Shown here: piece by piece, positions 3,801 through 57,259 of the stretch
How the letters are laid out: each line of letters opens with the position of its first letter
Position numbering within the stretch: the first letter of the stretch is position 1
NCBI RefSeq assembly: GCF_964188315.1
Contig: NC_135667.1
Span: 27,218,001 to 27,282,000, forward strand
Origin: Podarcis muralis
Lineage: Eukaryota
Reading direction: 5' to 3'
Length of the DNA stretch: 64,000 bases
Position numbers and translations under genes: made by a program
Notes under the pieces: generated by a model
Seen by the model: only the letters and a program-made list of their open reading frames with translations
Told to the model about the DNA's origin: nothing
Databases searched by the model: none

Positions 3801-4050
3801 CGTCTATCGATACCATCAACATGCATCTAGCTTTAGTGTCCATTTTATCATGTTCCCTGTTCTGAGCATGTGCAGCAGCCTGTTGTTCTGCTGTGGCATC
3901 TGCTGCAACAGCCACAAACGGCTTTCGCCTCTGGACATAGTCAGCCCACACTTCTTTGGCTTCCAACCAGACTTGAGCCCTCTTAGACCACTGCCCGTAA
4001 TTAGCAGAGTTCAACTTTGTAAAGGGAACCTGGAAATTTTCCACTGCCAT
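895..4050 (-). CDS. Copia gag-pol polyprotein (about 1050 aa open; RT truncated before YVDD, RNase H absent in window)
   Basis: Zinc knuckle CFRCGSRFHLIAKC; protease WIIDSGASH; integrase HTDVCGP / SDRGGEY / ENAVAER (DDE intact); RT KARLVAQGF, YSEVYAP, QFDVSTAYL, IYGLKQS. After DNCL (895) the ORF reads into MITE sequence. Confidence 0.92.
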
Positions 4051-8972: not shown

Positions 8973-9908
8973 TCAGAGGTCTCTCTTCCTCCCTGTCACT
9001 TTCCGGAAAGCTTGTTTCACATCCTTATTCCTTAAGCTATAGATCAGTGGATTCAACATGGGTGTGACGGTGCCATAGAATAAGGAAATGTATTTGTCTA
9101 GATCTGAGGATGTCTTGGTTTGAGGCTGTAAGTACATTGACATGGCTGTTCCATAGAATATGGTGACCACCATGAGATGTGAACTACAGGTTGAGAAGGC
9201 CTTGGCTCTGTTCTCTGTGGATTGCATTTTCAACACGGTGGTGATAATACGGGCATAGGTGACCAAGATGAAGCCAAAAGGAAGAAGCAGAGTAAGGATG
9301 CTGGTGGCAAACATTGACACCTGGTTTCCACTAGTATCTGAGCAGGCCAACTTGAGCATAGCCTGGACCTCACATGTGATGTGGTTGATAACATTATGCC
9401 CACATAGAGAGGCCTGTGAGGTGAGAGAAGGTACCAGGATCAGCAGGAAGGAGCTGCCCCATGAAATGGTTGCCATAGCAATGCAAACGTTACTGCTCAT
9501 TATGATATTATAGCGCAGGGGGTTGCAAACAGCCACCCAGCGGTCATAGGACATCATTGCCAGGAGGAAGCATTCTGTCATCCCCAAGAAGAGGGAGATG
9601 TACATTTGGGCGTAACAGCCAGAATGGGAAATGGTGGTCTTGGCTGACAGGCAATGAGCCAACATCTGGGGGATGGTGCTGGTAGTATAGCAGATGTCAA
9701 GGAAAGACAGGTTGCCAAGGAAGAAGTACATGGGGGTGTGCAGGCGGGGGTCCACCACAGCAAGCAAGAGGAGGAGACCGTTGCCCACCACAGTGATGAG
9801 GTAGATGAGGAGAAAGAGGCCAAAGAGGGCGATCTTCGTCTGAGGGTTACTGGAGAGGCCCAACAGGATGAATTCGGTCATGGTAGTCTCATTCTCTCTT
9901 CTTCCCAT
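8973..9908 (-). CDS. Olfactory receptor, class II (gamma group; OR2/OR13-like), intact, 311 aa
   Basis: N-terminal NET sequon, LHTPMYFFLGNLS, MSYDRWVAVCNPLRY, KAFSTCSSHL, PMLNPLIYSLRN; single coding exon; acceptor-like ttcctgtttccgtcccag just upstream of the ATG. Confidence 0.97.
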   Translation of the reverse strand: MGRRENETTMTEFILLGLSSNPQTKIALFGLFLLIYLITVVGNGLLLLLAVVDPRLHTPMYFFLGNLSFLDICYTTSTIPQMLAHCLSAKTTISHSGCYAQMYISLFLGMTECFLLAMMSYDRWVAVCNPLRYNIIMSSNVCIAMATISWGSSFLLILVPSLTSQASLCGHNVINHITCEVQAMLKLACSDTSGNQVSMFATSILTLLLPFGFILVTYARIITTVLKMQSTENRAKAFSTCSSHLMVVTIFYGTAMSMYLQPQTKTSSDLDKYISLFYGTVTPMLNPLIYSLRNKDVKQAFRKVTGRKRDL

Positions 9909-24562: not shown

Positions 24563-24753
24563 CTAGATGTTATTGGATTACAACTCCCACCATCCCTGAC
24601 CACTGACCTTGCTGGCTGTGGCTGATGGGAACAGGAGTCCCACAACATCTGGAGGGTGACAAGTTCCATATCTTAGGTGTAAAACCATCCCTGTTCCAAA
24701 ACTTCCCATTTCAATCCTGATTTCATTCTCTTAGCTCAAGCATTGTGTGTGTG

Positions 24754-25698
24754 ATGGAGCAATACAATCAAACAATTGTCCTGGAGTTTGTGTTTCTGGG
24801 ATTTTCCAAAGATCAAGACACCAACCTTTACCTCTTTGCAGCGGTCCTTTTCATGTACCTCATCACCCTGACAGGTAACACACTCATCATCGTGGCCATC
24901 CACATAGACCCACGGCTCAGCACACCCATGTACTTCTTCCTGAGCTATCTGTCCTTCCTGGACATCTGCTACACAACAAGTGTGGTGCCTCAGTTGTTAA
25001 TCCATTTCCTGACCAGCTACAAGACCATCTCCTACAACAGGTGCATGGCTCAGCTCTATCTCTCATTCGCCTTCGGAAGCATTGAATTTATCCTCTTGGC
25101 AGCCATGGCTTATGACCGATATGTGGCTGTCTGTCATCCGTTGCATTACAAGGTCATCATGAGCAGGACAGTGTGTATGCAGTTGGTGCTAGCATCCTGG
25201 ACAGCCGGATTTCTCAATGCTCTCCTGCATACGGTGTTCACTGTGCGCCTTCACTTCTGCAGCTCCAACATCATCAATCACTTTGCCTGTGAAGTCCTGG
25301 CTGTTATCAAGATTGCTTGTTCAGACACTTCCATCAATGAGATTCTGTTTCTGGTGACAGGGTCCATTGTGCTGGTGATCCCCTGTATTGTGGTCACACT
25401 TTCCTACGTCTATATAATCCGTGCTATCCTACGTATCCAGTCTTCAGGAGGTCGTCAGAGAGCCTTCTCCACATGTACCTCTCACCTGACCGTAGTCGCC
25501 CTCTGCTATGGCACAGCAATCTTTGCTTACATGAGCCCCAGATCCAACACTTCGCCCAACCAGGACAAGATGCTGGCTTTCTTCTATGCAGTCGTTACTC
25601 CGATGCTCAACCCTATAATCTACAGCCTAAGGAACAAGGAAGTCAAAGGAGCCCTGGCTAAAGCAAGAGGGAAAAATATCGTTTCTGAAAGGCATTGA
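24754..25698 (+). CDS. Olfactory receptor, class II (gamma group), intact, 314 aa
   Basis: ATG at 24754 (MEQYNQT, sequon); LSTPMYFFLSYLS, MAYDRYVAVCHPLHY, RAFSTCTSHL, PMLNPIIYSLRN; acceptor ttcattctcttag ends at 24734. Confidence 0.97.
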   Translation: MEQYNQTIVLEFVFLGFSKDQDTNLYLFAAVLFMYLITLTGNTLIIVAIHIDPRLSTPMYFFLSYLSFLDICYTTSVVPQLLIHFLTSYKTISYNRCMAQLYLSFAFGSIEFILLAAMAYDRYVAVCHPLHYKVIMSRTVCMQLVLASWTAGFLNALLHTVFTVRLHFCSSNIINHFACEVLAVIKIACSDTSINEILFLVTGSIVLVIPCIVVTLSYVYIIRAILRIQSSGGRQRAFSTCTSHLTVVALCYGTAIFAYMSPRSNTSPNQDKMLAFFYAVVTPMLNPIIYSLRNKEVKGALAKARGKNIVSERH

Positions 25699-27589: not shown

Positions 27590-28075
27590 TTTCTTTTCTT
27601 TTTTTGATAATTTTTTTTATTGCAAAGTAAATACATTAATACCAAGCCACACATAAAGAATACTATAAAGAGAAAGAAAAAAATGAAGAAAAGGGAGGAA
27701 GCAAAAAAGACAGTAAAAAGAATAAAGAAAAGTATAATATTTCAATACAATAAACACTATTTTACAAAATAATAATAGCAATAGACTTCCATCACCCTCA
27801 CAACACTTAATTTCACATTTCATATTTTATCTGTATTTCAGTATTATTTTCATCTTAATATATAGATATGTATATATGTATGTTTCCCTTTTTCCATTCA
27901 CGAGGTCATTCTAGACACAGCCTAATTTTTACATTAGAACCTTGTCTTTCTAAATAATCATTCAAACACTTCCATTCCTTCTTGACTGTATTCATTGGCT
28001 TTAGTCTTATTACATCCATCAATTTGAACAGCTCCAAATATTCACATAATTTACATAGCCATTCCTCTTTGGTCG
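27590..28075 (-). mobile_element. L1-clade LINE 3' fragment
   Basis: PTKEEWLCKLCEYLELFKL...KKEWKCLNDYL...RLCLE* closely resembles the C-terminus of the 18988-21945 element; poly-T at ~27590-27620. Confidence 0.8.
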
Positions 28076-28181
28076 GTACCAGGAACCAGCTGAGGTGCCA
28101 TTTCACCAACTAATCTCTCCTTAAATTACCGGCTCAATTTCATAATTGGTTGGTGGATTCACTGTTTCTTGCCACATCTAA

Positions 28182-28375
28182 GGCTGTGTACACATTACTA
28201 GGTTGTCCTGATTCCTCAATTTGAATCCAGGCAGGTTTGGCGGGAAACGCATCAAATTGTGATTATTTCCTAAGAAACCACATATGGATTGTAACTAATG
28301 TTGTGTACACACTGCTCCCAAGCCAGTGATGAAAGCACACTGGTTGCGGAGCAAACAGGAACCGTGTACACAGCC
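28182..28375. mobile_element. Short MITE with GGCTGTGTACAC TIRs (PIF/Harbinger-like)
   Basis: 12-bp perfect terminal inverted repeats; TSD not clean. Confidence 0.45.
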
Positions 28376-28417
28376 CTAGTGCAGGATTGCAGCCTAAGTC
28401 ATCTTCAAAATGTGCCC

Positions 28418-28926
28418 TTATGAGATTTTCAGGGGGATCTCAGTATCCCAGACCTGGAAAAAGGGAAACATCCTCTCAGAGAAAGGATAGTTGAAAGTAT
28501 AGATAAGTTCCATGGAGTCGGCGTCATAAAAGGAGAGGATTTCAAAATCGTACTCCAGGAGTATCTTGATCCGTCGCGGGGATTTCCACAGTGAAAGGAC
28601 AGTGGAAGGAGAGGTAGAGGCCATGTATTCTCCCTCAATCAGCTGCAGTGCCCAAAACCCCTCAGTAACTCTGATGCATTGGTACCATTTTCTCCCTATG
28701 GATTCCCGGACTGCCCCGATGGCCCATGCTTTGGCCTTGCCCACCTCTACCACCCATTCCATAGTCCCAGAGGTGATGCCTTCTGCTCCGAGGACACATG
28801 GCGAAAAATTGAAGCGCTCAGGGTTGTCAGGAAGAACCTGGGCCTGGCTGCCCAGGTACACACTTTTCCGGTCTTCAGAAAGGATGAGGGTAGGGAAGGC
28901 TGTCTTGGGATCCAGTATGACTTCCA
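28418..28926 (-). CDS. Terminal exon encoding a complete PRY/SPRY (B30.2) domain
   Basis: EVILDPKTAFPTLILSEDRKSV, PDNPERF...PCVLG, WVVEVG, WAIGAVRES, GFWALQL, LSFYDA, FPFF; acceptor tctctgtttttag at 28927; phase 1; stop at 28418-28420. Confidence 0.93.
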
Positions 28927-29526
28927 CTAAAAACAGAGACGGAGAATAGTTTGCAAACAACCTTACCAGCTGAAGAAATGACTTTCTACTCTAGGGGTTG
29001 AGAACCTTTGGCCCTCCAGATGTTGCTGAACTACAACTACCATCATCCCTGGTCATTGGCCGTGCTTCCTGAGGCTGATGGGAGTTGTAGTTCAGCAATT
29101 CCCAGAGGACCAACTGTTCCCTATACCTGTTCTACTGCTTTAGTGGTAACAGTTTCCAGAGCACAGACATCTCAAGGTGAAGAACAACGTTTTAGGAACA
29201 GTGAATGTTATTTAACGGTACCTTTGCTAACCAGAAAAAAACATGTACCATTTTCCTTCCTAGGATAAGTTCTAAAAACTAAACAAAAAACAACTTTGTA
29301 GATTTGGGCATAATTTCAGGTTGAACCCAGGAAAGCCTTCCTTGAAATATTACAGGTATATTTTTATGATAATTACAAACTCATATTCATAACTATATCA
29401 TTGCTGTTAAGAAGAAGAAAAAGGCCCTGATAATTATAATATGGTAAGTGTAACTTAAAATTGCACATTATTTTCAAAATTACCATTCCAGAAGGCGTCT
29501 TCTTCTATTTGTCCCCGTAAACTAAC

Positions 29527-29637
29527 CTTTCTTTTGAGTCCCACAAAACTTGTCAGTGATACTGGACAGCAACCTTTCTTCCCGTTTTCTTTTTTCTTCC
29601 CTCGTCGAGGCCGCTGCTTTTGTAGGCTGCAGGAAAA
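29527..29637 (-). CDS. Candidate linker exon of the PYD-B30.2 gene (100 or 111 nt depending on acceptor)
   Basis: Donor AAAG/GTTAGT at 29526; acceptors at 29626 (ttttcctgcag) and 29637 (aaacaacag); open frame PTKAAASTREEKRKREERLLSSITDKFCGTQKK joins in phase 1 to VEVILDP. Confidence 0.6.
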
Positions 29638-30099
29638 CTGTTGTTTTTAAAAAAAGGATGCTCTTGTTAAAAATAAGTAAATAAAAGAAAGAAGATTTCC
29701 CATCCCCTTTTTGCTCCCCTTACACTGCATGTACAAGAACAGTGTCCGTTTGCGGAAGTCCCATCAATAAACTGATGCAAATAGGATCAGGGTCTGCATA
29801 GTATTGCAGTAGTTAGGGCTCCTCCAGACTTTGCATCATTGATATAGGGCTCATGGAATAGAAATGTGCAGTATAAAGTCTGAGGCTGTTCTGTGGGCAG
29901 AATTCCACCCATCATTGGAGGGCTGCAGTCACATAGAAATATCACAATAAGAAACTGCTGGAGACCCAATGTCACAGCTGGCATAGTCTTGGATCTGCCA
30001 GGGCCCCCAGCCCCCAGAAGCACATAACAAATATGGTGGTATGTAGCTGCCCATTGGCTAAGCCTCCATATGTGTTTGGACTTTTTCACAAGGCTAGTA

Positions 30100-30298
30100 C
30101 AGTGGTACCTTGGGTTAAGAACTTAATTTGTTCTGGAGGTCCGTTCTTAACCTGAAACTGTTCTTAACCTGAGGTACCACTTTATCTAATGGGGCCTCCT
30201 GCTGCCACCGCGCGATTTCTGTTCTCATCCTGAAGGAAAGTTCTTAACCCGAGGTACTATTTCTGGGTTAGTGGCGTCGGTAACCCGAGGTACCACTG
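30100..30298. mobile_element. Tigger/pogo-like MITE
   Basis: TA-CAGTGGTACCT...AGGTACCACTG-TA. Confidence 0.88.
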
Positions 30299-30628
30299 TA
30301 CAGCTTCCTGCAACTGTGAGGCTCCATCATACAATATGGAGCAGGGAACAGCATGTGGCCGCTTTTTTAAAGGGCCAGGCAGCCACTGCTACTCACTAAG
30401 CCCTCGTCAGCTGCACTGAGGTAGTGGCAGTCCCAGTGATGTCGCCATGGGCAAGGAAGGGAGAATCTCTGCTGCCAGGGAGGCAAGGGAATAAAGCATG
30501 AGTTTGAGGTATCAGGGACAGTAGTGAGCTCACCAGGCGTGGAGGACAAGGGCTCCACTGCAAGTATGAGGCCCTTCAAGGACTGTTGCAGGCCCTATAC
30601 TGCTGCATTGGAGAGACAGGTTTTCATC

Positions 30629-30745
30629 TTAGAATCACAGATTCATAGAGTTGGGAGGGACCCGCAGGGTCATCTTGTCCAACCCCCCTACAATGCAGGA
30701 ATCTCAGCTAAAGAATCCATGAGAGATGGCCATCCATTGTTGCCC
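30629..30745 (-). mobile_element. CR1 3' end fragment
   Basis: agaatcacagattcatagagttgggagggacc...gtcatcttgtccaaccccct is the reverse of the CR1 tail. Confidence 0.7.
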
Positions 30746-31010
30746 ACCCAGGCACACAGCAGACGAGCGAAGACCGTTTGGTGCTCACAACCACACCATA
30801 CATTTAAAGCACACGGATTCCGCCCAAAGAATTATGGGAGCCATAGTTCGTACCTCTGTGATGGTTGAACTGCAGTTCCCAGGATTCCATGGGCAAACTC
30901 TATGGGCATTTCTCAAGCATGTTTGATACATGGATGAAGCGCAGGATTCATAGCAAATTGGACAAGAGACGTACGAAGCCTGGAATGGTGGGGCTCCTTT
31001 GTTTACTTAC

Positions 31011-31287
31011 ACGCTGGCATCTCTTGTTTGACTTTTGCCGACAGATCCTTTCTATTTATTCGGTCGAGGATGTTGACTGTCATCTGCAATGCTTTTGCCT
31101 CCTCGTAGGCCCTGACCATGAGCCGTGCTATTTCAGTGAGGTCAGCCTTCTCGATCTTACAGTGCCGGATCGGCTTGTAGCCTTGCTCCAGTGGGTAGTC
31201 TTCGAGGTGCATCTTAAATCTCTTGAATTCCTCCTCTGTGAGCTCGTCCAAGTAGTCCACCAATTTGCAGCAGACACTGTTGGACAT
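31011..31287 (-). CDS. Pyrin domain (PYD) exon, NLRP3/NLRP12-type
   Basis: CKLVDYLDEL...FKRFKMHLEDYP...EKADLTEIARLM...KALQM..IL.RINRKDL parallels human NLRP3 CKLARYLEDL...KKFKMHLEDYP...EKADHVDLATLM...INRRDL; Kozak gccaagATG; GTAAGT donor at 31010 (phase 1); upstream acceptor ttctttctcctag near 31337. Confidence 0.93.
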
Positions 31288-31682
31288 CTTGGCCCCTCCC
31301 AGTCAAAGGTTTACGGAAGGAGGAAAAATGGTCTCTAGGAGAAAGAAGGGGAGTCAATTCTCTTCTGATTGGATTGAAGAAGCAAAGATGGGGCTGACCA
31401 GTTTCTGCAAAGTGTCATGAGCTGTGAGCTGAAGGATGCACAATAATTTTACAGAACGATTTCAGTTTCATAAAAGGAGACTCCTCAACCCATTTATTAT
31501 TATTATTATTATTAAGCAACTTAATGACAAAATGCAAACGGGAAATCAAAAGCCATTGAAAAGAATGAAACAACAAACAATACCACATTCCTAAAATGCT
31601 CATCCAAAAATATAGTAAGAGGGACAAGTTTCTGGAAAAAAGCATAATGTCAAGGGGAACCAGTGGTTGCAAATATCAGTTA

Positions 31683-36780: not shown

Positions 36781-37336
36781 TTACTCAAGGTCATTGAGGA
36801 GCTGCAGTTCAAAGACCTGCAGGTGTTCCTTGAGCCGTCGATGTGCCTCGGCGCTGTGCGGCCGCCGCTCGCGCTGAAGCTCACAGATCCGAAGGCGGAG
36901 TCGCTGTTCTCGGCGCCGGCAGGCCTGGAGCTGCCGCTGCGCCTTCCCCAGAGCATCGAGGGCCGCCTCCGCTCGCCGCTTCCACAGCAAGGCACTGCCG
37001 ACCTGGTAGCTGTGCTCGTTCTGGATGTAAGCCCCAGCTGGGGGAGGAAGGCGCAACATATAGAGAGAGAGGGAAACGGGGTGGGATGAATCCCCCACAG
37101 GCTCCGGGAGGGCCGGAGAAGGAGAAGCTTCTTCCTGGCCAGTAGCAGCGGGTGACTGTTCCAGGGGAATGTCTGACAGGGTGGCCAGGCTCTCTGACGC
37201 CGGCCCCGGGAGGTCAGGCTGGCTTCGAGGCTCGCCGCTGGTGGGAGCAGCCCCAGGGCTTGGCAGCTCTTGTGCAGGGAAGCAGGAGATGTCCATGCAC
37301 AAAGGACTCGACTCCTCCTCCAGGCAAGGGCTGCAG
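36781..37336 (-). CDS. THAP7: THAP7 coding exon 4 (HCF-1 binding motif and coiled coil)
   Basis: YMLRLPPPAGAYIQNEHSYQVGSALLWKRRAEAALDAL.KAQRQLQAC.RREQRLRLR is nearly identical to human THAP7; acceptor ttccttgcctacag at 37337; AATAAA at ~36603-36608. Confidence 0.95.
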
Positions 37337-37684
37337 CTGTAGGCAAGGAACAGAACCCTGGTCAGACAGGAACCGAGTGGGGAAGATCTGCCACACTTTT
37401 ATGACAGGTATAGTGACAAGCAGAGGAGGACAAAATTGGACATGCCCTTGTTCCAGATGCTTCCCGAAATAACCCAAGCATGCCAGCATGGAGCAATAAC
37501 TGTGGTCCAACTTCAACTGGAGGGCGGCAGCTTCCCTACCCCTGCAGTAAGGCAGCAATTCTCTGTGCACACTTCCGAAGAAGCAAGCCCCACTAAACAT
37601 CATTAACATTCACAGGATGGTACAGGAAGGGAGGGAAGACCTTCCACGGAGCATGGCAAAAGAAGCCAGAAGGGCAGTACTCAC

Positions 37685-37801
37685 CTCTGCTTCTGCTGAC
37701 GTTTCGCGAGTTTCGAGTTGCCTAGCTTTGATTTTTGGCGCAGTTTGGTGTGAAGTTCAAATATTGTGGGAACAGCACCCTCTTTGAGCCGATGGTAGCC
37801 A
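37685..37801 (-). CDS. THAP7: THAP7 coding exon 3
   Basis: GYHRLKEGAVPTIFE; canonical AG/GT sites; phase 2-2. Confidence 0.95.
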
Positions 37802-38609
37802 CTGCAAAAAGGAGCATCAACACTCATAAGCCATCATCTGAACTACAGACCTTGCAGCAAGACATCTCTTTTTGGGGAGCTGCTGGGTTCTGAGAGGTGC
37901 TAGCTGCACCTGCGGTTAGCCAGTTATATTTCTGCATTGCAATGGTTTCCCTCTAGATCTCTGCACATGCAACTGCATGTGCGGAGTCCCAAATAAACAG
38001 AATGAGCTTTGTAAGTAACACATGCTGCTTAAATTCTGATTTCTCTCCACAAATCTCAATGGAGATAATCCAGTGTGACCTCCACAATACAGCACTCCCA
38101 CTTGCTTATTCTCCTAAGAAGATATAAAATTGCTTTATAAGGAGTCGGACCATTATTGCCCACTACTATTTGCTCTCAGTGATACTTAAGTAGTATGTAT
38201 TGGGAAAAGCCTCTTCCTGAGTCCTTAAGATCCTCACACACCTTCATTACTTTATCAAACTGATCTAACAGGTCTTGGTGACTTGGGTATGTCTAGGTTT
38301 ATCTACATCTACACAGCATCTACACATTGGATTCTGCCCTCACCCCCCAAAAAAGTATTTAAATTGAAAGCTGGTCACCCTGAATAAACCACAGAGCGGG
38401 TCTTCCATGACAGCTTTCTGGCCATCAACAATTGTTCCCCCCACCCCGCCGGCCTTTAAGTCATTTCTAGCTCCCTTCTCCACCCCCTCTGCAAGCAGCA
38501 CCTTTGCCAATGGCAAATGTATAATCTAAGACATTGTATAATCTAAGACATATCCACCTGTTTTAATTCTGCTTAACTGTTCATGCCCTTTCATATTCCA
38601 GTGACCTAC

Positions 38610-38762
38610 CTGGTGCCCACCAGTTCGAAGCAACTCTTCTCAAAGTGCTTGGAGCAAAAGTAAACATACTTGGAAGCAGGGTCCCAAAGACCCTGGCCGC
38701 TCATGTCCTTCCTCCGACAATTCTCCAACCACATCGCTCGCCGGGGGTTGTCCTTTGGAAGT
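38610..38762 (-). CDS. THAP7: THAP7 coding exon 2 (THAP domain)
   Basis: LPKDNPRRAMWLENC...SGQGLWDPASKYVYFCSKHFEKSCFELVG; canonical splice sites. Confidence 0.96.
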
Positions 38763-39403
38763 CTAGGAGCACACACAGGAGGTGAGTCAGGCAAGGATGA
38801 GTAGCAGAGTGCAGCAAAACAATGGAGGCCTTCTTCCCAGGCACAAGGACATTTGTCTAAAAATGTCATCCCAGGAGCTTCCCTGTCATGTGGACTTATG
38901 TGCATCATAGAGCAAAAGTATGATTTGATTGCATGGAATAACAATTGCTCTGAGTGAGTTGCTTAATGTCAAACTGAGTCTGACTGATCCCTTGGGACTC
39001 CAGATCCTTGGCTAACATAAGAGTCTTTCCCAGGCTGGAAAAAGAACTACAGCATCATTCTAGCCCTTTAACGCTAGGAGACACTACAAGGATATCTGAA
39101 TTACTATTTCCAAAGATTATGGCTGTTCTGCCAACAGTATCACTGCGGTGCAAAAGGAAAGTAAGTGTAGCTAGGTAAAATATTCCATAGTTTTTGGTGA
39201 AGCCACCCTACAACTTGCCCTTCCCATTCACATTTCATGCCAACAAACCCCTATCTTGAACACTTTTTTTGGTGAGGGAGAGGGCAGGACATGATTGTTA
39301 CTTTAAAAAAGAAGTATGCATATTACAGCTTCTGTTTGTGCGAAATCTGCTTAAGGTACCATAAAAAGGCACTGTGAACTTCAGAAATGATAACAGGGAA
39401 ATA

Positions 39404-48250: not shown

Positions 48251-50843
48251 TCCTTTTCTTTTATTTTTTTTGTAGAAAGAACTTACAAAGCTACCCAGTC
48301 CAAGTGTTTTGTTATTTCAACCTGTTAATAGTCTGATAAATCTCTTCCTTCAAAATATCTCTATTCATTTTGGTCTAATGTGTCCCACTTATACATTTTA
48401 CATTAGATATGTCCTCACCTCAATGTTTCATCAAGCTATTGAGTTTTAGTAATGATAAATTCCCAAATAGGGAATTTATTTTTGCATTATCATAAGTAAC
48501 ACTCCCATCTTTTTGTATCAGTGAATAGATTTTTTTAGACATCTGCTTCCCCTTTATCACATGTGCTAAACATTTGAATGCTCATATAATGATTCATATA
48601 CTAGCATATAGGGAGAAATTCGATTCAATTCTCATTTAAAGATGAAACTTCTCACCAGCGAAACAATATGTGAACCAAAACAGCCATCAATTGAAATCTG
48701 AAGTTCTAAAAATTTTGCAGTGCAGTTCAAGCAACTCTCATTGAAGGGTTGTGTGAAAGAAACATTCCTACAGGAAAGCTATCTGTGTTCTTTCCTTGAC
48801 AGGAACCTAAGGGAGATGTTTGTTTCTCTAAAGTTTTATTGAAGATGGCATTAAGATATATTGAAATTATTCTATCCCCTGTGGCAAACTGTAAGTGTTC
48901 CTTAAAAGTTTTGGCCAAGAATGAGAATTGATTGGAATTAGGAGCATATTGTAGCACCCTGCTTGTGGTTAACGCTTAGCTGGAATGAAATATTCAACGC
49001 AGCAATAGAGAAATTAAAATAATAATTTATTTGTCAGACAAATAAATGAGAGGCACAGTGGTATATGGTTACCAAGCTCTGGCCTGGCCTCCTGCCATTA
49101 TGGCCAGCACTTATATTCCCTCAGCCCAGCTCCCTTGCTCCTCCTTTGGCTGCCTCTGTCCAATCAGCCTGGTTGAAATTCCTATTGGCTGCCTGCTATA
49201 TCCAATCCTAAAAGATACACCCATATCCTCCTGTCCTTATATGGAACACAAAGAGCTATATATTGTTACATCTATAAATGACAAATAAGTAGTAATATAT
49301 CTTACATGTGTCTCAACAAGGAATCTTAATTACCAGCTCACCTCTTGCCCTCCTTGCCCTATTGCCTTCTAAAACAAATGGTTAATCTTAAATTTTTATC
49401 TTAAACATATGTCAAGGATCTTGAGTTCACATCAACATTGAAAGATCTCCTTCATTTGAAGGTTTCTAAACAAATGCCTGACAACTATATATCAGGAGTG
49501 CTCGCTGGCGTCTCCTGTCTGGCAGGGGGGCTAGGCTGGTGGCTGACTTAATTTCAGGATAAATACAACTCTTACAACTATATGAAATAAGAATCTAGCA
49601 TTTCTTAAATCCTTTGCATAATTACATTTAAGCCAACATATTTAATACATAACATAGGTAGCCTTTTAAAAGGAATAAGGCCTTTGTAAAGTAAAAAAGG
49701 AACTCAGTAAAAAACAGCTTCAAAAGAAGCCTCTTCAGTTTACACCCCCCCTTCAGCCAGCTGCTTTTCCCATTAGCTCTTCCCAACATTTATTGCCCTT
49801 TAACTCTCTCAGTTTAAGAAAGAAACAGCTTTAGAAAAGACTTCCCAAAAATGCTCTCTTTCTGCCAGCTAGATGCTTCTCCATTGCTCTTGGCCTTTTT
49901 AACCTTAGGAAGAAGATCTGGCTCATTTTACTGGGAGGCACATTGGTATTATTTTACTATTTACTCATTCCTAATTATGTTTATCTCTGCTTTTTTTATC
50001 TTCTGTAACATGTAGGGTCAGTGTCGCTCTCAGCCTGTAATTCCCCCTTTTACGACTTTGAGAATTGTTTTCTGCTATAAATCAAGGGGCCCCTTGTCTA
50101 GGAGGAAAACATTGCCAAGGTTCTCTAAGCAGCTGGTCTTCTGCCTGGCATGAAACATTTGAAAATCTTTAAGCTCTCTCTTTAATATACAAGCCCTGAT
50201 CAAACATTAATAAAATGCAGACTTATGATTAGATGCCTCAATATATCCTATATGGTCCTGAAAACTGAATGTAAGATTAGAAAAAATTGAGAAATGGAGC
50301 AAAATCATAATGGAGAGATTCACCTATCCCTATCAGGCAGACATACTTCCACCCTGACTCAGTCCCAAGGCCCAGGATTTATACTTTTGTTTGTCCCATT
50401 ACAGCATATTCTCTATACACTTCATCTGTTCCACAACAACTACTTATTATGGTTAAGATATGACAAGTATTCCCCCCCACCCCGTTCTTCCAACACACCT
50501 GCTGCTTCAGATTGGATAACCGATCATTAACTCCCCTATAATTACTGTATCAATCTCAAGATGACTGAATGTGTTTTTCATGAGGCCCCAGTGCATTTCC
50601 AGAGACCACTACTAGATATCTAAATGCAAATGCAACCCCCACTGTCTCTGGCATTTCAAGTAAGAGAGGAAAGCCAGATTCTGTAAGTCTAATCTCAGAT
50701 CTTTTCTTGATTTTGTAACCAAGCTCCCAGGAATTCATCTCTTGCTTAGGTAGCATGTAGTACCATTCAAGATAACCTGCTTTGTGACTGATCCGAAGAC
50801 CAATGTTGTAAATGGAATACAGGGCTCTCTGTCTAGAAGGAAG

Positions 50844-51070
50844 ATGAGCATGATATTTTTTGTGATGCTAGTGCTCTTGTTGCTTCCATGGATGATATGT
50901 AATGGGAAAATGATCAGTACGTGCACCATCAGTGACCCATTCCATATTCCGCACAAGTATTATCAGCCAGGTGACCTGATCATTGGTGGACTTACTTCTC
51001 ATCTCTTTCCTTCTCTTAACTCGGAAGACTTCAAGAAATACCACACCTTCCAGCAATTACTTAACGTATT
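50844..51070 (+). CDS. V2R (class C GPCR) exon 1 (signal peptide)
   Basis: MSMIFFVMLVLLLLPW...YYQPGDLIIGG; donor GTAAGG; phase 2. Confidence 0.9.
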
Positions 51071-51119
51071 GTAAGGACTTTATTTGATGCTCATTAATAT
51101 CCAGATCCTAACCCTGTTT

Positions 51120-51305
51120 ACCGGTGTTTCCATGTGCTGCTCTGGTTTTGCCAGAAGCGGCTTAGTCATGCTGGCCACATGACCCTGAAAAACTGTCTGT
51201 GGAAACGGACAAACACCGTCTCCCTCAGCCTTTAAAGTGAGATGAGCACCGCAACCCCAGAGTCGTTCGCGACTGGGCTTAATTGTCAGGGGTCCCTTTA
51301 CCTTT
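51120..51305 (+). mobile_element. Sauria SINE 3' half in V2R intron 1
   Basis: Matches the 3' part of the full-length copies, ending ggggtccctttacc. Confidence 0.85.
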
Positions 51306-51945
51306 TAACCCTGTTTACACAGAAATGAAGACAAATACTCTTTAATGCAGTTTGAAGCAGAGACTGCTCTCATTTAAAGATGAACCTATGTTTTTAACAG
51401 TAATGAAACAATAAGCAAACCAGAACCCAGCTATGCCTTGAACTTCAAACTTTTCCAAATTTTGCAGTGCAGTTCTCCAGTCAAGTAATGCATACTAGGG
51501 TAAAGTGTACATAACAATGCATATTTTAGTGAAATAACATTTAAAAATGCATTATATCTGCAGACATCACTTTGCAAAATGTATACACTGGGCAGAACTG
51601 CATACAAAAATATGAATATTAGGAGAAATTTGCACTAAAATGCTGGTGGCCTTTTTTTTTTTTTAAATCACAAACTGATATCAGAATGTAAACTTAAGAT
51701 TGGAAAAATGAGAAACAGAGAGAAATAAAAACTGACAGATCCACCCATATTTATATCTTTGCCTGCCAAAAATTGAGTATTGGTTTGAATCAGGAACATG
51801 TATCCTATATGCGATTGAAAACAGAATTTAAGATTTGGGGGGGGGGGGGGGAGAGAGAAATGGAGAGAAACCCAAACAGACAGATTCACCCATCTCTATG
51901 TCACACAATGCCTGGTAACTCAATATCAAGTAACTCTCATTGCAG

Positions 51946-52237
51946 GGTTGTGCCAAAGAACTACCAGCATATTCTGGCATTGGTATTTGCTGTCAAGGAG
52001 ATCAATGAGAATCCTGAGATCTTGCCAAATGTCACCTTGGGATTTCACATCTACGATAGTTATTACATTGAAAGGATGACCTATCGGGCAACTCTGGAGC
52101 TTCTATTCACACAGCAGAAATTTGTTCCCAACTACAAGTGTGACACTCAGAAAAGTCTGTTGGCTGTCATTGGGGGACTTGATTTTGAAACCTCTCTCCA
52201 TATGGCAGCCGTCCTGGGTGTTTACAAGACTCCACAG
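51946..52237 (+). CDS. V2R exon 2
   Basis: [34 protein letters not shown]...AVIGG; 292 nt; phase 2 to 0. Confidence 0.95.
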
Positions 52238-52809
52238 GTAAGATACAGGTAACTTCATGAGTCATTTGCATTTTCCTTTTCTACCCAGAAAAGTTTTCCG
52301 GTTCTGAGAGACAAAGATCACGTTCACACAATACAGTTAAAGCACTATTATTCCACCTTAACACTCAGAATCCGGAGAACTGTAGCTTGTTAAGCATGCT
52401 GAGAATTGTTAGGAGACCTGTTACAGAGCTACAATTCCAGCACTCTTAACAAATCTCCAGTAAATTTTAAACATCATTTATTACGGCCGTAGGCCCATAC
52501 AGGTAAAAACAACACATAAATAACAGTAAACATTATTGGTTACATGAAATATTTCACAAGCCACAAATCCACTATGCTAGGACCACACTCCACTCTTACA
52601 AAAGCTGAAGCTGATGACACTCTCAGGAATATCTTTGCATTCGAGATGCACAGATTTTGCAGTGATGCCATCAAATCAACTTGCTCCATCCTGGATACTT
52701 TGGCCTAGCAGGAGAAGTTAATCCCAATCGCAATTGCCCTTTCACTGCAGATGCATGTAGCAATTCTCTCTATTACATTGACATAATATGCTTCCTTATT
52801 TATTTTTAG

Positions 52810-53673
52810 CTCAGTTATGGCTCCTTTGCTCCAGAAGACAGTGATCAAGTCCAGTCTACTCCCTTCTACCGGATGGTTCCAAACGAAGCCCATCAATACA
52901 CTGGCATTGCTCAGTTGCTTCTGCACTTTGGATGGACGTGGGTTGGGTTTATCGCTATAGAGGGAGAGAGCGGGGAGAGATTTTTGCAGTCCATGCAACT
53001 TCTGCTTTCCCAGAGAGGCATCTGCTTTGCTTTCTCAGAGAGAACTCCAAAAAACACATATTGGAGAGTTTTATTTTCTTTAAGTCTCAAGTGGCTCCAA
53101 ATCTACAAAGTTATTGCGGGGAGCAAAGCCAGTGCTGTTGTTGTCTTTGGAGAAACCAAGTCCATGCTTTGTTTACGAACAATGCTCATCATAGGTGAAA
53201 TAACAAATGGCGCAAATACACCAGTAGGAAAGGTGTGGATTATGACTGCTCAGCTGGAGTTTACAGAATTCTTCTACCAAATGACCTTAAGAATGGAAGC
53301 CTTCCACGGTTCCATCTCCTTCAGGGTTCATTCAAAAGAGGTTCAAGGATTCAGAACATTTCTTCAGCTCTTAAATCCTCTGGGGACCAATGAAGACATT
53401 TTTCTCAAGTTGTTCTGGGAACGAGCATTCAGATGTTCATTTCCAAGCTCTAAGACAAAGAAGCAGGTTTATAAAATCTGCACTGGAAAGGAGAAGCTTG
53501 AAGATCTCCCTTCATCTGGCTTTGAGACGAGCATGACTGGCCACAGCTACAGCATCTACAATGCAGTCTCTGTTGTAGCACATGCTTTACATGCCATTTT
53601 CCAAACCAGGTACAAACGCAGAACTATGGAAGACAAAGGGAGGTGGGTGCTTCGAAATCTGCAGCCTTGGCAG
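52810..53673 (+). CDS. V2R exon 3
   Basis: LSYGSF...FYRMVPNE...LLLHFGWTWVG...FHGSISF...SYSIYNAVSVVAHALH...PWQ; 864 nt; phase 0. Confidence 0.95.
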
Positions 53674-54043
53674 GTAATATCTTTCTTGAGACTCAGCTCT
53701 ATTGATATAAGCAGAGGAATGACAACCCAGGGGCATATAGAACAGTGCCTTTATAGGAAGCTACCCTATACTAAATAGGATCTTTAAGAACATCATATTC
53801 AGTATTGTTCACACTTACTGTGACTTTCCTGCATTCCAGGAAAAAGTCACTTGCAGCCCTACCCAGAGATGCTTGGGTTTGGAGACTAGCACTTGTTTAT
53901 TTTCTCATTCATCTTTCAGCTGCCAACAAAAGCTTCAATCTGCCAAGTTCCCTCCCCTGGAAATAATTGTGTGTGGAAAAGATCTGAGAGATGTTCGAGT
54001 TTTAATCAATTGTTCCTGTCCTTCTGTTCCTCTTTCTACTCAG

Positions 54044-54271
54044 CTCCACCCCTTTCTTAGGAGTGTCTCATTTAACAACAGCGTGGGAGAAACGGTGTCT
54101 TTTGGTGAGAGTCTGGAATTGAAGAACGGATTCGATATTACCAATTTTGTCATTTTTCCAAATAAATCCTTCCTGAGAGTCAAGTTTGGAAAAATAGATT
54201 TGGAGGCTCCCACAGGCAAGGAATTTTCAGTTGATGATGGAAAAATGGTGTGGCACAGAAGCTTTAAGCAG
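54044..54271 (+). CDS. V2R exon 4
   Basis: LHPFLRSVSFNNSVGETVSF...FDITNF..FPN; 228 nt. Confidence 0.95.
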
Positions 54272-54932
54272 GTGGGGCACAACTGCGATTTCCAGGCTCT
54301 ATAGGGAAATTGAATATTATTGCACCACTAATAAAACAGAGCAAATGGATAGCAGTCTTGGTGCACTTCTTGCATAACTCAAATCCTGAACCCGTAATTA
54401 TGGAAGCCTAGAACACCATGTTTCCATATATGAAAATTATCCCTATGTATTAGTCTATAAATCTGTAAATTTAATGCTTATATTAAAAAAGCATAACACT
54501 GTTATAAGCCACTCTGCGTTCAACTGGCTGTGCATGCATACACCTGCAACATCACATGCCTCTATATCATTAAATGATTAGTAAGCATTAGGCTACAAAT
54601 GATGTAAAATTAGTATTTTTATGAAACAGTACACAATTTTGACGCTGCATTACTAAAAGTCTGGGTTTTGTCCCATTGGCAACGGAGACCATCAGCAACT
54701 CTTAATCCTGTCTAAAACCTTATCATGTACAGTACAAGCTACTTTATATCCATACAGTATTTGATAGGAATGCAGCCAATGTATTCCAACCATTTAACAG
54801 TCAATCAAACCTCAACCACCCAAAAAACCTGAAACAAGTTTCTCAAAAAAACCCCACCCAACACACCTTGAGTTTGCATCTGTTATTTTATTCTCGGTGA
54901 TAAACTATTCGTGTGTTTATTCAAATGGACAG

Positions 54933-55059
54933 GTTCCACCCCTTTCTACATGTAACCCAAAATGCCCTCCTGGCTCCAGCAAGAAAAAGAAGGAGGGGGA
55001 GAAATTCTGCTGCTATGATTGTTCTCCATGCCCTCAAGGCAAGATTTCATCCCAGAAGG
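54933..55059 (+). CDS. V2R exon 5 (cysteine-rich domain)
   Basis: VPPLSTCNPKCPPG...CCYDCSPCPQGKIS; 127 nt; phase 0 to 1. Confidence 0.95.
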
Positions 55060-56357
55060 GTAAGAGACAAGAACTACTTCAAAGATAGTACACATTGTAA
55101 CATACGTAAGGAGACGGTTTCAGCAAAAAATGAACCAATCATTGATGCCAGTGTTCTTTCTATAATAGCTGAAGCTCAGAAGCTTGAGGCTTTCAATGAT
55201 AATAATTGTATAAATTTTCATATCTTATTGGAGCAACACTCAGAAACCCAACTAGTATCTTTTTATGATATTCCTTCTGATTCTAAGTTAGAAGCCATCT
55301 TTCCCCACCCTAGTGATGTGATCTGCATGGGACTCCTATTGATGATCAATCAGAGGTTACCACTGACTTTGAATGGTGTTGGTCTCTTTTGGCAGCATTT
55401 CTACACTTTATCTAAACTTTTTCAGAAATCGAAATTTCGCCCTCATTTTCTGGTGTGTTATGCAGCAGGAGATAACTGAGGATGGGTCCGTAAGATAACT
55501 TACACAGGAATGCATCCAGTGCATTTGGACAGGACTTACTAATATTATTATTAATTATTCAATGTATGAATCGCCTTTTAAGAAGATTTCTTAGGTGAAT
55601 GAACAATTTAAAATAGCACATAGGAAATATAAAAGCATACAAATTCCATAGTTAACAAACAATAATGCAAGCTGGTGAGCACACAAAGCATACCCAACCT
55701 ACAAGTGTCTTCTCCCACAACCATGACTTCATCACTACAAAATAATCTACACCTTCAACTCAATCCCAGGAACAATGACATCAACATTCAAATGCCTGGG
55801 GAAACAAAAATGTTTTTGCTTAGCACCAAAGTCATGTCAAAGTTGGCCCCAAGTGAATCTCTCTGGGGAGAGCATTCCATAAATGAGGGACACCATTGAA
55901 AAGCCCCTTTCCCCTGATGCCACCTTCCAAACCTCTTTCAGAGGATACATAAGGAGGAGGGTCTCTGATGGGGACCTAAACATCTGGATAGCCTGATATG
56001 GGAGAGGAAGAGAAGCTTGCAATCAAGCAGTTGATAGAACTCTGCCCTAAATGTATCTCCCACTTTATGATTAATGCATGGGAGATTGAATATATGTCTG
56101 AAGGAGCCACTCCACTACAAATGTTCTTAAATCTTCAAACATCATTGTCTCCACAGCAATCTATACAACAGATGATGGCCCCTGTGAAGTTAGCATAACA
56201 TAGGCAGACAACCCAGCAAATTATGCTGATTTCTGGTCCAAAGGTCATAGTGTATTTGTTCTGTCTAGGAATCCTTTTGGTACTCCAGTTTAATGTTAGG
56301 ATGTCATAGACAGTTTCTGTCCGGCACACCCAGAACCTGCATCTCTTCTTTTTCCAG

Positions 56358-57259
56358 ACATGGACAATTGCGACAGATGTAGTGAAGATCGATATCCAGA
56401 CAAAGGCCAATCACAATGCATTCCAAAGGCAATAATCTTCCTGTCTATAAAAGAGCATCTAGGGATGAGCTTGGCTTCCTTGGCTCTTTCTCTCTCTCTG
56501 CTCACAATGTTGGTTCTAGCCATCTTTATTAAAAACCAGGACACGCCAATCGTCAGAGCCAACAATCGGGATCGAACCTACGCTCTCCTCACTTCCCTCC
56601 TGCTCTGCTTTCTCTGCCCTTTGCTCTTCCTCAGCCCACCAGAAAGAGTGATCTGCCTTCTCCGACAAGTTGCTTTTGCTGTCATTTTCACAGTGACCGT
56701 TTCTTGTGTGCTGGCCAAAACCATCACCGTGGTTCTGGCCTTCATGGCCACTAAACCAGGATCCATAATGAGGAAATGGGTGGGGAAAAGACTGGCAGGC
56801 ACCATTGTGTTTTCTTGTTCTCTTATCCAAGCAGGTATTTGCACTGTGTGGCTGATAACCTCTCCCTCATTCCCCCAGCTTGACATGCACTCCATGGTGG
56901 GAGAAATGATACTGGAATGTAATGAAGGGTCCGTCGCCATGTTTTACTGTGTTCTTGGTTACATGGGCTTCCTGGCTATGGTCAGCTTTGTTGTGGCATT
57001 TTTAGCTCGGAAACTGCCAGACAGCTTTAATGAGACCAAATTTATAACCTTCAGCATGTTAGTGTTTTGTAGTGTCTGGATATCCTTTGTTCCAGTTTAC
57101 TTGAGCACCAAAGGAAAATACATGGTGGCTGTGGAGATCTTCTCCATCTTGGCCTCTAGTTCTGGCTTGCTGGGTTCCATCTTTGCTCCCAAATGCTACA
57201 TTATTGTGCTGAGGCCCTATTTGAACAGTAAGGAGCAGTTAATAAAGAGGAAATTCTAA
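56358..57259 (+). CDS. V2R exon 6 (7TM domain and C-tail)
   Basis: [49 protein letters not shown]. The six exons total 2640 nt (879 aa plus stop) with consistent phases. Confidence 0.97.

What the first reader, a model, noticed from the sequence alone, without database searches (positions are those of the whole stretch)
28418..31340. Compact PYD plus PRY/SPRY gene: a candidate minimal inflammasome sensor independent of mammalian pyrin
Seen: an intact PYD exon (31287-31011, phase-1 GTAAGT donor) lies 2.1 kb upstream of an intact B30.2 exon (28926-28418, phase-1 acceptor) on the same strand. The 1.4 kb between PYD and the linker exon holds only TE fragments and is too short for a NACHT exon. 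No RING or B-box ORF is visible between THAP7's 3' end and PYD, so the PYD exon is the only coding exon seen that could feed the B30.2 exon. Models: PYD + 111-nt linker + B30.2 = 298 aa, or direct PYD-B30.2 = 261 aa. Established: mammalian pyrin (MEFV) joins PYD and B30.2 but through a B-box and coiled coil; many teleost NLRs carry B30.2 after NACHT-LRR. Here the PYD looks NLRP3-like (CKL..YL..L...FKMHLEDYP...EKAD) and the B30.2 looks TRIM-like. Inference: exon shuffling made a two-domain protein in which B30.2 binds a ligand and PYD nucleates ASC, convergent with pyrin. I cannot tell from here whether it has been described.
Basis: partly seen in the sequence, partly recalled or inferred. Interest (0 to 1): 0.88.

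Follow-up and report, generated by a model that had tools for sequence, protein, structure and literature searches.

The report
Lizard gene joining PYD and B30.2
A small, expressed and strongly conserved wall-lizard gene joins an NLRP3-like pyrin death-fold domain directly to a B30.2 binding domain; this looks like a minimal inflammasome-type sensor that reptiles and caecilians kept, that mammals and birds lack, and that no paper I found describes.

Summary
On the minus strand there are three phase-1 exons: a PYD exon (31287-31011), a 111-nt linker (29637-29527) and a PRY/SPRY exon (28926-28418). Together they encode 298 aa. Assembled RNA contigs from six runs, and raw reads from two more, carry exactly the junctions 31011>29637 and 29527>28926. 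Neither the direct PYD>B30.2 junction nor the 29626 acceptor was seen. The genome is Podarcis muralis.

The same three-exon gene exists in squamates, tuatara, turtles and caecilians, so it dates at least to the tetrapod ancestor. It is not a squamate novelty. dN/dS is 0.1-0.2 in both domains and about 1 in the linker.

The PYD is closest to mammalian NLRP3 (100 bits against 66 for pyrin) and keeps most NLRP3 residues needed to nucleate ASC. The B30.2 is BTN/TRIM7-like but lacks the BTN3A1 phosphoantigen pocket. There is no RING, B-box, coiled coil or NACHT. ASC exists in the same lineages. Teleost PYD-SPRY proteins are a separate fusion.

Databases name the gene TRIM39-like or butyrophilin-like, and I found no paper on it. 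Function as a ligand-clustered, ASC-coupled sensor is inferred and untested.

The parts
31288..31429 (-). Transcribed 5' UTR of the first coding exon. RNA contigs reach 31407-31429. Some contigs carry further unplaced 5' letters, so an upstream non-coding exon is possible.
   Evidence: Contig pieces. Two in-frame stops before the ATG.
31011..31287 (-). Coding exon 1 (277 nt): ATG plus the PYD (aa 1-92). It ends in phase 1 at a GTAAGT donor.
   Evidence: Pfam PYRIN E 2.3e-25. The same 277-nt exon is present in five other species.
29638..31010 (-). Intron 1 (1373 nt, GT..AG). It is filled with high-copy repeats and has no NACHT-size ORF.
   Evidence: Joint 29637|31011 in X1, X2, X5, X6, X8 and in X23/X24 reads. 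Intron ORFs have no Pfam hit.
29527..29637 (-). Coding exon 2 (111 nt, phase 1-1): a 37-aa charged linker. AlphaFold2 predicts one low-confidence helix here, at aa 105-124 (block-mean pLDDT about 59-64).
   Evidence: The exon is 105-111 nt in lizards and turtle and 54 nt in the snake. dN/dS is 0.3-1.3.
28927..29526 (-). Intron 2 (600 nt, GT..AG).
   Evidence: Joint 28926|29527 in all six contig runs, and in 18 reads of X23 and 1 read of X24.
28418..28926 (-). Coding exon 3 (509 nt): PRY/SPRY (B30.2), aa 130-298, with stop TAA at 28420-28418.
   Evidence: Pfam PRY 3.9e-22 and SPRY 1.1e-15. Foldseek matches BTN3A1/TRIM7 B30.2 with target-normalised TM 0.8-0.88.
28029..28417 (-). 3' UTR, at least to 28029. 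Contigs break there at a LINE-derived repeat, so the true 3' end is not fixed.
   Evidence: Contig pieces. Sequence.
36781..38944 (-). Upstream neighbour on the same strand: a THAP-domain gene. The order THAP, then PYD/B30.2, then an olfactory receptor is conserved in Sceloporus.
   Evidence: Pfam THAP 2.7e-08. Sceloporus locus L002.

Best explanation
SHOWN. The locus is a functional three-exon gene of Podarcis muralis. It encodes a 298-aa cytosolic protein: an N-terminal PYD of the NLRP3 type, a 37-aa fast-evolving linker, and a C-terminal B30.2 (PRY/SPRY) of the BTN/TRIM7 type. It is transcribed and spliced exactly so. It belongs to an orthologous family present in squamates, tuatara, turtles and caecilians, and both domains are under purifying selection.

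INFERRED mechanism. The protein has no NACHT, coiled coil or B-box to oligomerise it, so it most likely works on the logic of AIM2.
1. The B30.2 binds a conserved cytosolic ligand or a multivalent surface.
2. Clustering of several molecules brings their PYDs together.
3. The clustered PYDs seed ASC (PYD-CARD) filaments and so caspase-1.

In outcome it resembles pyrin (a PYD output with a B30.2), but it was built separately, from an NLRP3-type PYD exon and a TRIM/BTN-type B30.2 exon, before amniotes and amphibians split.
For: Gene and transcript:
- Pfam domains.
- Splice sites and a 897-nt CDS.
- Single RNA contigs spanning all three exons in X5, X6, X8 and X13. X1 and X2 carry both junctions, each with part of the coding sequence on a second contig. 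X13 is labelled another species. Junction reads in X23 and X24.

Conservation:
- About 40 PYD+PRY/SPRY proteins of 264-355 aa from lepidosaurs, turtles and caecilians.
- The same 277 / 111 (105, 54) / 518-527-nt exon layout in a turtle, an iguanian, an amphisbaenian, a gecko and a snake.
- dN/dS is 0.06-0.17 for the PYD and 0.08-0.21 for the B30.2.
- In the B30.2 tree the family is one clade (100/96) that follows the species tree.

PYD competence:
- The family profile scores 100.7 bits to human NLRP3 PYD, 65.7 to pyrin and about 52 to ASC.
- NLRP3 residues whose mutation impairs ASC nucleation are E15, K23/K24, M27, D31, R43, R80 and R81 (PMC9106292). They align to D14, K22/R23, M26, D30, H42 (Arg in most other species), R79 and K80.
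- The same paper reports that NLRP3 PYD alone nucleates ASC specks.

Partner present:
- PYD+CARD ASC is found in a lizard and a caecilian and in the green anole (PMC13076529).

No other module:
- In-frame stops lie upstream of the ATG.
- AlphaFold2 shows only a PYD, one low-confidence helix and a B30.2.
Against: - There is no functional datum of any kind.
- The ligand is unknown. Zero of the six basic residues of the BTN3A1 phosphoantigen pocket are kept (alignment; PMC4303140).
- Strong purifying selection on the B30.2 argues against a TRIM5-like arms race and leaves the ligand class open.
- Turtle and caecilian PYDs have lost some interface residues: K23 is M or L in turtles, and M26 is F/L in turtles and N/T in caecilians.
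- In Podarcis R43 is His and R7 is Cys.
- A monomeric PYD can just as well cap or compete with filaments.
- Tissue and inducibility are unknown because the run labels are coded.
- The ISRE-like motif near the transcript start is not conserved.
Confidence: 0.5

Rival explanations
1. Negative regulator or decoy. The NLRP3-like PYD caps or competes at ASC or NLRP filaments, as primate PYD-only proteins do. The B30.2 targets it to a partner, in the way the pyrin B30.2 has been reported to bind caspase-1 (from my own knowledge, not checked here). The result would be dampened inflammasome output.
For: There is no oligomerisation module. The PYD is very close to the receptor-type NLRP3 PYD. Some interface residues are lost in turtles and caecilians. 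Reading through the exon-1 donor hits a stop after two codons, which would give a 94-aa PYD-only product. One run has a low-depth contig crossing that donor (X2 record 12).
Against: The B30.2 is as constrained as the PYD over at least 300 My, which a simple decoy would not need. The main nucleation residues are kept in lepidosaurs. PYD-only proteins are young and lineage-specific, whereas this gene is ancient.
Confidence: 0.25
2. An ASC-independent adaptor. The B30.2 recognises a cargo or signalling protein, and the PYD docks onto another PYD protein. That partner could be an NLRP or one of the NACHT-less PYD-FIIND-CARD proteins of lizards. The role could also lie in NF-kB signalling or selective autophagy, as proposed for TRIM20.
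For: Lizards carry unusual NACHT-less PYD proteins (scan notes s1-175889 and s1-175915, unchecked; anole PYD-FIIND gene in PMC13076529). PYD-PYD pairing is promiscuous.
Against: The gene is found only in lineages that have ASC and is not found in ASC-less birds. The interface residues kept are those that contact ASC in the NLRP3-to-ASC model.
Confidence: 0.12
3. Origin rival: this is the non-mammalian ortholog of MEFV/pyrin. Mammalian pyrin would be the same gene after gaining B-box and coiled-coil exons, or reptiles would have lost them. On this view it is not convergent.
For: The distributions are complementary. Pyrin is reported to appear first in mammals (PMC11258412), and this family is absent from mammalian proteins in the search. 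Pyrin is the third-best distinct PDB match for the PYD (65.7 bits) and is close for the B30.2 (164 against 182 bits).
Against: The PYD is far nearer to NLRP3 (100.7 bits) and groups with mammalian NLRP PYDs at 99/94. There is no trace of B-box or coiled-coil exons in the 2-kb gene body of any of six species. I could not place pyrin sequences in a tree, and synteny was uninformative.
Confidence: 0.1

Closest known systems
Pyrin (MEFV / TRIM20), mammalian inflammasome sensor
   Same: An N-terminal PYD and a C-terminal B30.2 in one cytosolic protein. The B30.2 is of the same BTN/TRIM7/pyrin subgroup (164 bits). ASC is the expected partner.
   Different: There is no bZIP/14-3-3 linker, no B-box and no coiled coil (298 aa; from my own knowledge human pyrin is about 780 aa). 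The PYD is of the NLRP3 type (100.7 against 65.7 bits). The family is found in reptiles and caecilians and not in mammals.
NLRP3 (PYD only)
   Same: It is the best PDB match of the PYD. The motif FKMHLEDYP is shared, and most filament and ASC-nucleation residues are kept. Reptile family PYDs group with mammalian NLRP3/4/12 PYDs (99/94).
   Different: There is no FISNA, NACHT or LRR. Similarity stops at the end of the PYD.
AIM2 (PYD plus ligand-binding domain, without a nucleotide-binding oligomerisation domain)
   Same: The same two-module logic: a PYD output and a single C-terminal binding domain, with no built-in oligomeriser. This is the model for how the protein could work.
   Different: The binding domain is a B30.2, not a HIN. 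The AIM2 PYD is a distant match (about 30 bits). The ligand is unknown.
B30.2 domains of BTN2A2, BTN3A1 and TRIM7
   Same: They are the best sequence matches (182-176 bits) and fold matches (rmsd 2.2 A). The last-exon phase-1 B30.2 layout is also shared.
   Different: There is no Ig ectodomain, transmembrane segment or RING. Zero of the six basic residues of the BTN3A1 phosphoantigen pocket are kept.
Teleost PYD-SPRY proteins (for example Lates 318 aa, Clinocottus 507 aa)
   Same: The same domain pair.
   Different: In both trees they fall elsewhere. Their B30.2 is nested in fish BTN/TRIM39-like sequences and their PYD groups with fish PYDs. They are a separate fusion.

Membership tests
Tetrapod PYD-B30.2 family (unnamed; RefSeq 'TRIM39-like' / 'BTN3A1-like' models of 264-355 aa) | PYD + short linker + PRY/SPRY encoded by three phase-1 exons of 277 / about 111 / about 518 nt | tested here: met
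   Window exons are 277/111/509 nt. The same layout is found in Pangshura, Sceloporus, Rhineura, Eublepharis and Thamnophis.
Tetrapod PYD-B30.2 family (unnamed; RefSeq 'TRIM39-like' / 'BTN3A1-like' models of 264-355 aa) | Falls in the family clade | tested here: met
   The B30.2 clade has 100/96 support and follows the species tree. AU tests do not reject monophyly of the family PYDs (p 0.15-0.18).
Pyrin / MEFV (TRIM20) | B-box zinc finger and coiled coil between the PYD and the B30.2 | tested here: not met
   The transcript holds only a 37-aa linker. Pfam finds PYRIN, PRY and SPRY only. The intron ORFs tested are empty.
Pyrin / MEFV (TRIM20) | PYD orthologous to the MEFV PYD | tested here: inconclusive
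   Pyrin PYD scores 65.7 bits against 100.7 for NLRP3. No pyrin sequence could be put in the trees.
NLRP (NLRP3) | NACHT NTPase and LRR domains after the PYD | tested here: not met
   The window has no NACHT or LRR ORF of at least 90 aa. Intron 1 is 1373 nt of repeats. The transcript joins the PYD to the linker to the B30.2.
TRIM E3 ligases | N-terminal RING, B-box and coiled coil | tested here: not met
   The ATG at 31287 is preceded by two in-frame stops inside the transcribed exon. The N-terminus is the PYD itself.
Butyrophilins | IgV/IgC ectodomain and a transmembrane segment | tested here: not met
   Pfam and the AlphaFold2 model show none.
Butyrophilins | Basic phosphoantigen pocket of BTN3A1 (H351, H378, K393, R412, R418, R469) | tested here: not met
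   The aligned window residues are S171, A198, C213, M231, S237 and Q287 (alignment; residue list from PMC4303140).
ASC-nucleating PYDs | Filament-interface residues shown to matter in NLRP3 PYD | tested here: met
   Seven of eight are kept or conservatively replaced in Podarcis. The eighth (R43) is Arg in most other family members.
ASC-nucleating PYDs | Actual nucleation of ASC filaments | not testable with these tools
   This needs a speck or polymerisation assay.

The most novel reading that the evidence does not exclude
Reptiles and caecilians retain an ancient (at least tetrapod-stem) ASC-coupled PYD-B30.2 sensor. Mammals, birds and probably crocodilians, frogs and salamanders lost it. 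Its PYD exon belongs to the same lineage as the PYD that heads all mammalian NLRPs (NLRP3/4/12), whereas the NLRPs of sauropsids and amphibians carry other PYD lineages. That would mean a PYD exon was exchanged between this gene and the ancestor of mammalian NLRPs on the amniote stem. The 'pyrin-like' solution would then predate pyrin.
Probability: 0.25. Interest if true: 0.8.

Novelty: new variant of a known kind. Interest (0 to 1): 0.62.

Why it matters
Recent surveys state that the pyrin inflammasome appears first in mammals. They list few PYD sensors in lizards (PMC11258412). This gene is a conserved, expressed, ASC-compatible PYD protein with a ligand-binding domain in exactly those animals, and it is hidden under TRIM39-like, TRIM7-like or butyrophilin-like names.

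If it signals through ASC, it adds a receptor class to non-mammalian inflammasomes. It would be a natural minimal design, a PYD plus one binding domain, that is easy to test and engineer. It would also be a third independent PYD+B30.2 fusion besides pyrin and the teleost proteins.

The grouping of its PYD with mammalian NLRP PYDs bears on how NLRP3 obtained its effector domain. It also shows that automatic names mislead counts of TRIM and butyrophilin genes in reptiles.

Tried and rejected
1. Synteny with the human MEFV or NLRP3 loci. Both lie beside olfactory-receptor genes (from my own knowledge; for NLRP3, OR2B11 is also given in PMC13076529). The window's receptors are named only OLF3-like and 13H1-like. 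The turtle and snake flanks hold no informative gene. No conclusion is possible.
2. The PYD of a lizard's own NLRP3. The third protein search, seeded with the turtle NLRP3 P0177, returned turtle, crocodilian, bird, amphibian and mammalian NLRPs and only a python NLRP12-like protein (47 bits). No lizard NLRP3 was returned.
3. Pyrin in the trees. No pyrin sequence was available under a usable id. Only PDB bit scores were used.
4. Phosphoantigen sensing like BTN3A1. Rejected, because 0 of 6 pocket residues are kept.
5. TRIM7-like recognition of C-terminal glutamine. The key residues were read from PMC9394474, but no tool alignment to TRIM7 was shown, so this was not tested.
6. An interferon-response element. 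GAAACTGAAATC lies at 31458-31469, 30-50 nt upstream of the contig ends. There are four such matches in the window against 1.4 expected, and none at the same place in five orthologous loci. I do not count it as evidence.
7. The second acceptor at 29626 (a PYD-only frameshift product) and the direct junction 31011>28926. Neither was listed in eight runs, at thresholds of 10% and 2%. Contigs drop rare forms, so low-level use is not excluded.
8. DNA of the caecilian locus (file too large) and the Varanus locus (no exact record) could not be fetched.
9. Literature. Searches for PYD-B30.2, PYD-SPRY, pyrin-like and MEFV in reptiles found no description. The 2026 paper on butyrophilins in squamates concerns true Ig-bearing butyrophilins.
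Full report
OBSERVATION

The ORF 31287-31003 is a PYRIN domain (Pfam E 2.3e-25). The ORF part 28927-28421 is PRY (3.9e-22) plus SPRY (1.1e-15). The 37-aa piece 29637-29527 has no family.

The splice signals can be read directly from the sequence:
- T|GTAAGT after 31011
- CAG|TT before 29637
- G|GTTAGT after 29527
- TTTTAG|TG before 28926

All junctions are in phase 1. Joining the three exons gives 897 nt, which is 298 codons plus TAA. The two olfactory-receptor genes of the window are exact matches to proteins on a 59.6-Mb NCBI contig that also carries Podarcis muralis RefSeq models, so the genome is the common wall lizard.

TRANSCRIPTS

Fourteen runs flagged as probable RNA hold 22-43% of the sampled words of the 3.1-kb stretch, which is about the exonic share. 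I laid eight runs.
- In X5, X6, X8 and X13 a single assembled contig runs from the 5' UTR (31335-31429) through 31011|29637, then 29527|28926, into the B30.2 exon. In X6 and X13 it goes on to about 28029-28041. X13 is labelled another species.
- X1 and X2 carry both junctions too, but in each a part of the coding sequence lies on a second contig.
- The skipped pieces end in GT..AG, which reads CT..AC on the plus strand.
- Raw reads of X23 give 18 reads on junction 2 and 1 on junction 1. X24 gives 1 and 3.
- Nearly all first mates lie on the plus strand, as expected for a minus-strand RNA in the usual stranded library.

No junction 31011>28926 and no use of the acceptor 11 nt downstream (29626) was listed, at thresholds of 10% and 2%. 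The 298-aa form is therefore the product. The 261-aa form and the frameshifted PYD-only form (scan note s1-189007) have no support, although assembled contigs would hide rare forms.

The transcribed region upstream of the ATG contains two stops in the PYD frame, so nothing can be added at the N-terminus. Two contigs carry unplaced letters 5' of about 31409 or 31429, where AG dinucleotides follow pyrimidine runs. An upstream non-coding exon is likely, but I could not place it.

CONSERVATION

A search with the B30.2 exon returned proteins carrying PYRIN+PRY+SPRY from lizards, snakes, an amphisbaenian and the tuatara. They are named TRIM39-like, TRIM7-like, butyrophilin-like or erythroid membrane-associated protein-like. 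The best hit is a 298-aa model from Podarcis raffonei that is 98% identical over the B30.2 exon and has the same exon junctions.

A profile search added turtles (Pangshura, Mauremys, sea turtles, Pelusios, Platysternon; 48-55% identity) and two caecilians (43-44%). No crocodilian, bird, mammal, frog or salamander protein with this domain pair was found.

I fetched five orthologous loci and threaded each protein onto its DNA. All have three exons of 277, 111 (105 in Sceloporus, 54 in Thamnophis) and 518-527 nt. Sceloporus also keeps the order THAP gene, this gene, olfactory receptor.

Nei-Gojobori dN/dS among squamates:

| Region | dN/dS |
|---|---|
| whole CDS | 0.11-0.21 |
| PYD | 0.06-0.17 |
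| B30.2 | 0.08-0.21 |
| linker | 0.3-1.3 |

Both domains are maintained by selection and the linker is a spacer.

WHAT THE DOMAINS ARE RELATED TO

PYD. Against all PDB sequences the lizard PYD scores 69 bits to NLRP3, 57 to NLRP4, 34 to pyrin and 34 to ASC. A profile of twelve family PYDs scores 100.7 to NLRP3, 73.7 to NLRP4, 65.7 to pyrin, 60 to NLRP9/12 and about 52 to ASC. In a search of 1.8 billion representatives, the best non-family hits with a single PYD match are mammalian NLRP3 PYDs at 39-46% identity. Some multi-PYD repeat proteins score higher in total. Similarity ends with the PYD.

In a 57-row PYD tree, the lepidosaur and turtle family PYDs (94/83) join the sampled mammalian NLRP3, NLRP4, NLRP12 and marsupial NLRP3-like PYDs (97/85) in a clade with 99/94 support. 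All of the following lie outside it: turtle and crocodilian NLRP3, bird NLRP3 (named NLRP6), python NLRP12-like, frog, salamander, caecilian and coelacanth NLRP PYDs, and ASC. The caecilian family PYDs sit next to the clade.

AU tests do not reject monophyly of the fourteen family PYDs (p 0.15 and 0.18). With only 95 columns, I treat the grouping with mammalian NLRPs as a lead and not a result.

B30.2. The family profile scores 182 bits to BTN2A2, 177 to BTN3A1, 176.5 to TRIM7, 168 to BTN2A1, 164 to pyrin and 150 to TRIM21. In a 54-row tree the caecilian, turtle, tuatara and squamate domains form one clade (100/96) in species-tree order. The teleost PYD-SPRY proteins are nested among fish BTN and TRIM39-like domains, and their PYDs also group with fish PYDs.

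The tetrapod gene therefore arose once, before the split of amphibians and amniotes. Teleosts made the same pair separately.

STRUCTURE AND RESIDUES

I predicted the structure of the P. raffonei ortholog with AlphaFold2, using 36 family sequences. The model gives:
- a confident six-helix PYD (most 10-residue block means 87-95, one at 65)
- one low-confidence helix in the linker (aa 105-124)
- a poorly resolved PRY
- a good SPRY sandwich

Mean pLDDT is 72. Foldseek matches the B30.2 of BTN3A1, TRIM7 and TRIM21 at rmsd 2.2-2.6 A.

The NLRP3 PYD residues whose mutation weakens filament formation or ASC nucleation are E15, K23/K24 and M27 (strong effect) and D31, R43, R80 and R81 (partial effect) (PMC9106292). 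In the gap-free alignment they correspond to D14, K22/R23, M26, D30, H42, R79 and K80 of the lizard protein. Position 42 is Arg in most other species. Turtles and caecilians have lost some of these residues.

The six basic residues of the BTN3A1 phosphoantigen pocket (PMC4303140) align to S171, A198, C213, M231, S237 and Q287. That ligand class is therefore excluded.

PARTNER AND LITERATURE

ASC (PYD+CARD) is present in a cordylid lizard and a caecilian and, with conserved flanking genes, in the green anole (PMC13076529). Birds lack ASC (PMC11258412) and also lack this gene.

That survey included Podarcis muralis. It states that the pyrin inflammasome appears first in mammals, and the passages I read do not mention a PYD-B30.2 protein. 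Searches for PYD-B30.2, PYD-SPRY, pyrin-like and MEFV in reptiles found no description.

HOW IT MOST LIKELY WORKS

Shown: a cytosolic two-domain protein with a receptor-type, ASC-compatible PYD and a constrained binding domain, and no oligomerisation or catalytic module.

Inferred: like AIM2, it should be inactive as a monomer. It should signal when several B30.2 domains are gathered on one ligand or surface, so that the PYDs seed ASC filaments. I put this at about 0.5.

The main rival is an inhibitor that caps ASC or NLRP filaments or tethers a partner (about 0.25). The third is an ASC-independent adaptor role (about 0.12).

On origin, an independent assembly from an NLRP3-type PYD exon and a TRIM/BTN-type last exon is favoured over orthology with MEFV (about 0.1). 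All exons are phase 1, as is usual for these gene families (from my own knowledge). Pyrin could not be placed in a tree, so the B30.2 half of that question stays open.

VERDICT

It is already modelled in databases under wrong names, and as far as I could find it is undescribed in papers. Its function is untested. It is a new variant of a known kind: a pyrin- or AIM2-like sensor architecture.

Noticed in passing
PYD trees; window 31011-31287: Reptile PYD-B30.2 PYDs group (99/94) with all sampled mammalian NLRP PYDs (NLRP3, NLRP4, NLRP12). The NLRP PYDs of turtles, crocodilians, birds, a python, amphibians and the coelacanth lie outside. The alignment has only 95 columns, and AU tests do not reject family monophyly (p 0.15-0.18).
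   Followed up: partly
window 31404-31430 (-): RNA contigs in X2 (270 unplaced letters) and X5 (34 unplaced letters) leave the genome at about 31429 and about 31409. AG dinucleotides follow pyrimidine runs at both places, so an upstream non-coding 5' exon is likely. In four other squamates a ...TTTCCAG acceptor-like site lies 25-30 nt before the ATG. In Podarcis the same site reads CCG.
   Followed up: partly
window 31458-31469 (-): There is an ISRE-like GAAACTGAAATC 30-50 nt upstream of the RNA contig ends. The window has four such matches against 1.4 expected, and the motif is not conserved in five orthologous loci.
   Followed up: yes
window 31003-31011 (-): Read-through of the exon-1 donor meets a stop after two codons (..PACK*). 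Intron retention would therefore give a 94-aa PYD-only protein. One low-depth contig (X2, 30750-31040) crosses the donor unspliced.
   Followed up: partly
window 727-4050 (-): A long intact ORF (1107 aa) of a copia-type LTR retrotransposon, with gag, integrase and RVT_2 reverse transcriptase domains.
   Followed up: partly
window 50784-57259 (+); 8973-9908 (-); 24745-25698 (+): The neighbours are chemoreceptor genes. There is a vomeronasal type-2-like receptor (ANF_receptor and 7tm_3 exons) and two intact olfactory receptors (RefSeq names 13H1-like and OLF3-like).
   Followed up: partly
one search hits from snakes (for example Thamnophis P0022 285 aa and P0027 301 aa on one contig; Candoia P0021 and P0033): Snakes show two protein forms per species that differ around the linker. 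These may be isoforms with alternative linker exons or tandem copies. I did not resolve which.
   Followed up: no
top hits (P0075, P0077, P0078 and others): The strongest total scores to the lizard PYD come from proteins with 4-15 tandem PYD repeats (550-2400 aa) of unknown origin. These multi-PYD proteins were not examined.
   Followed up: no
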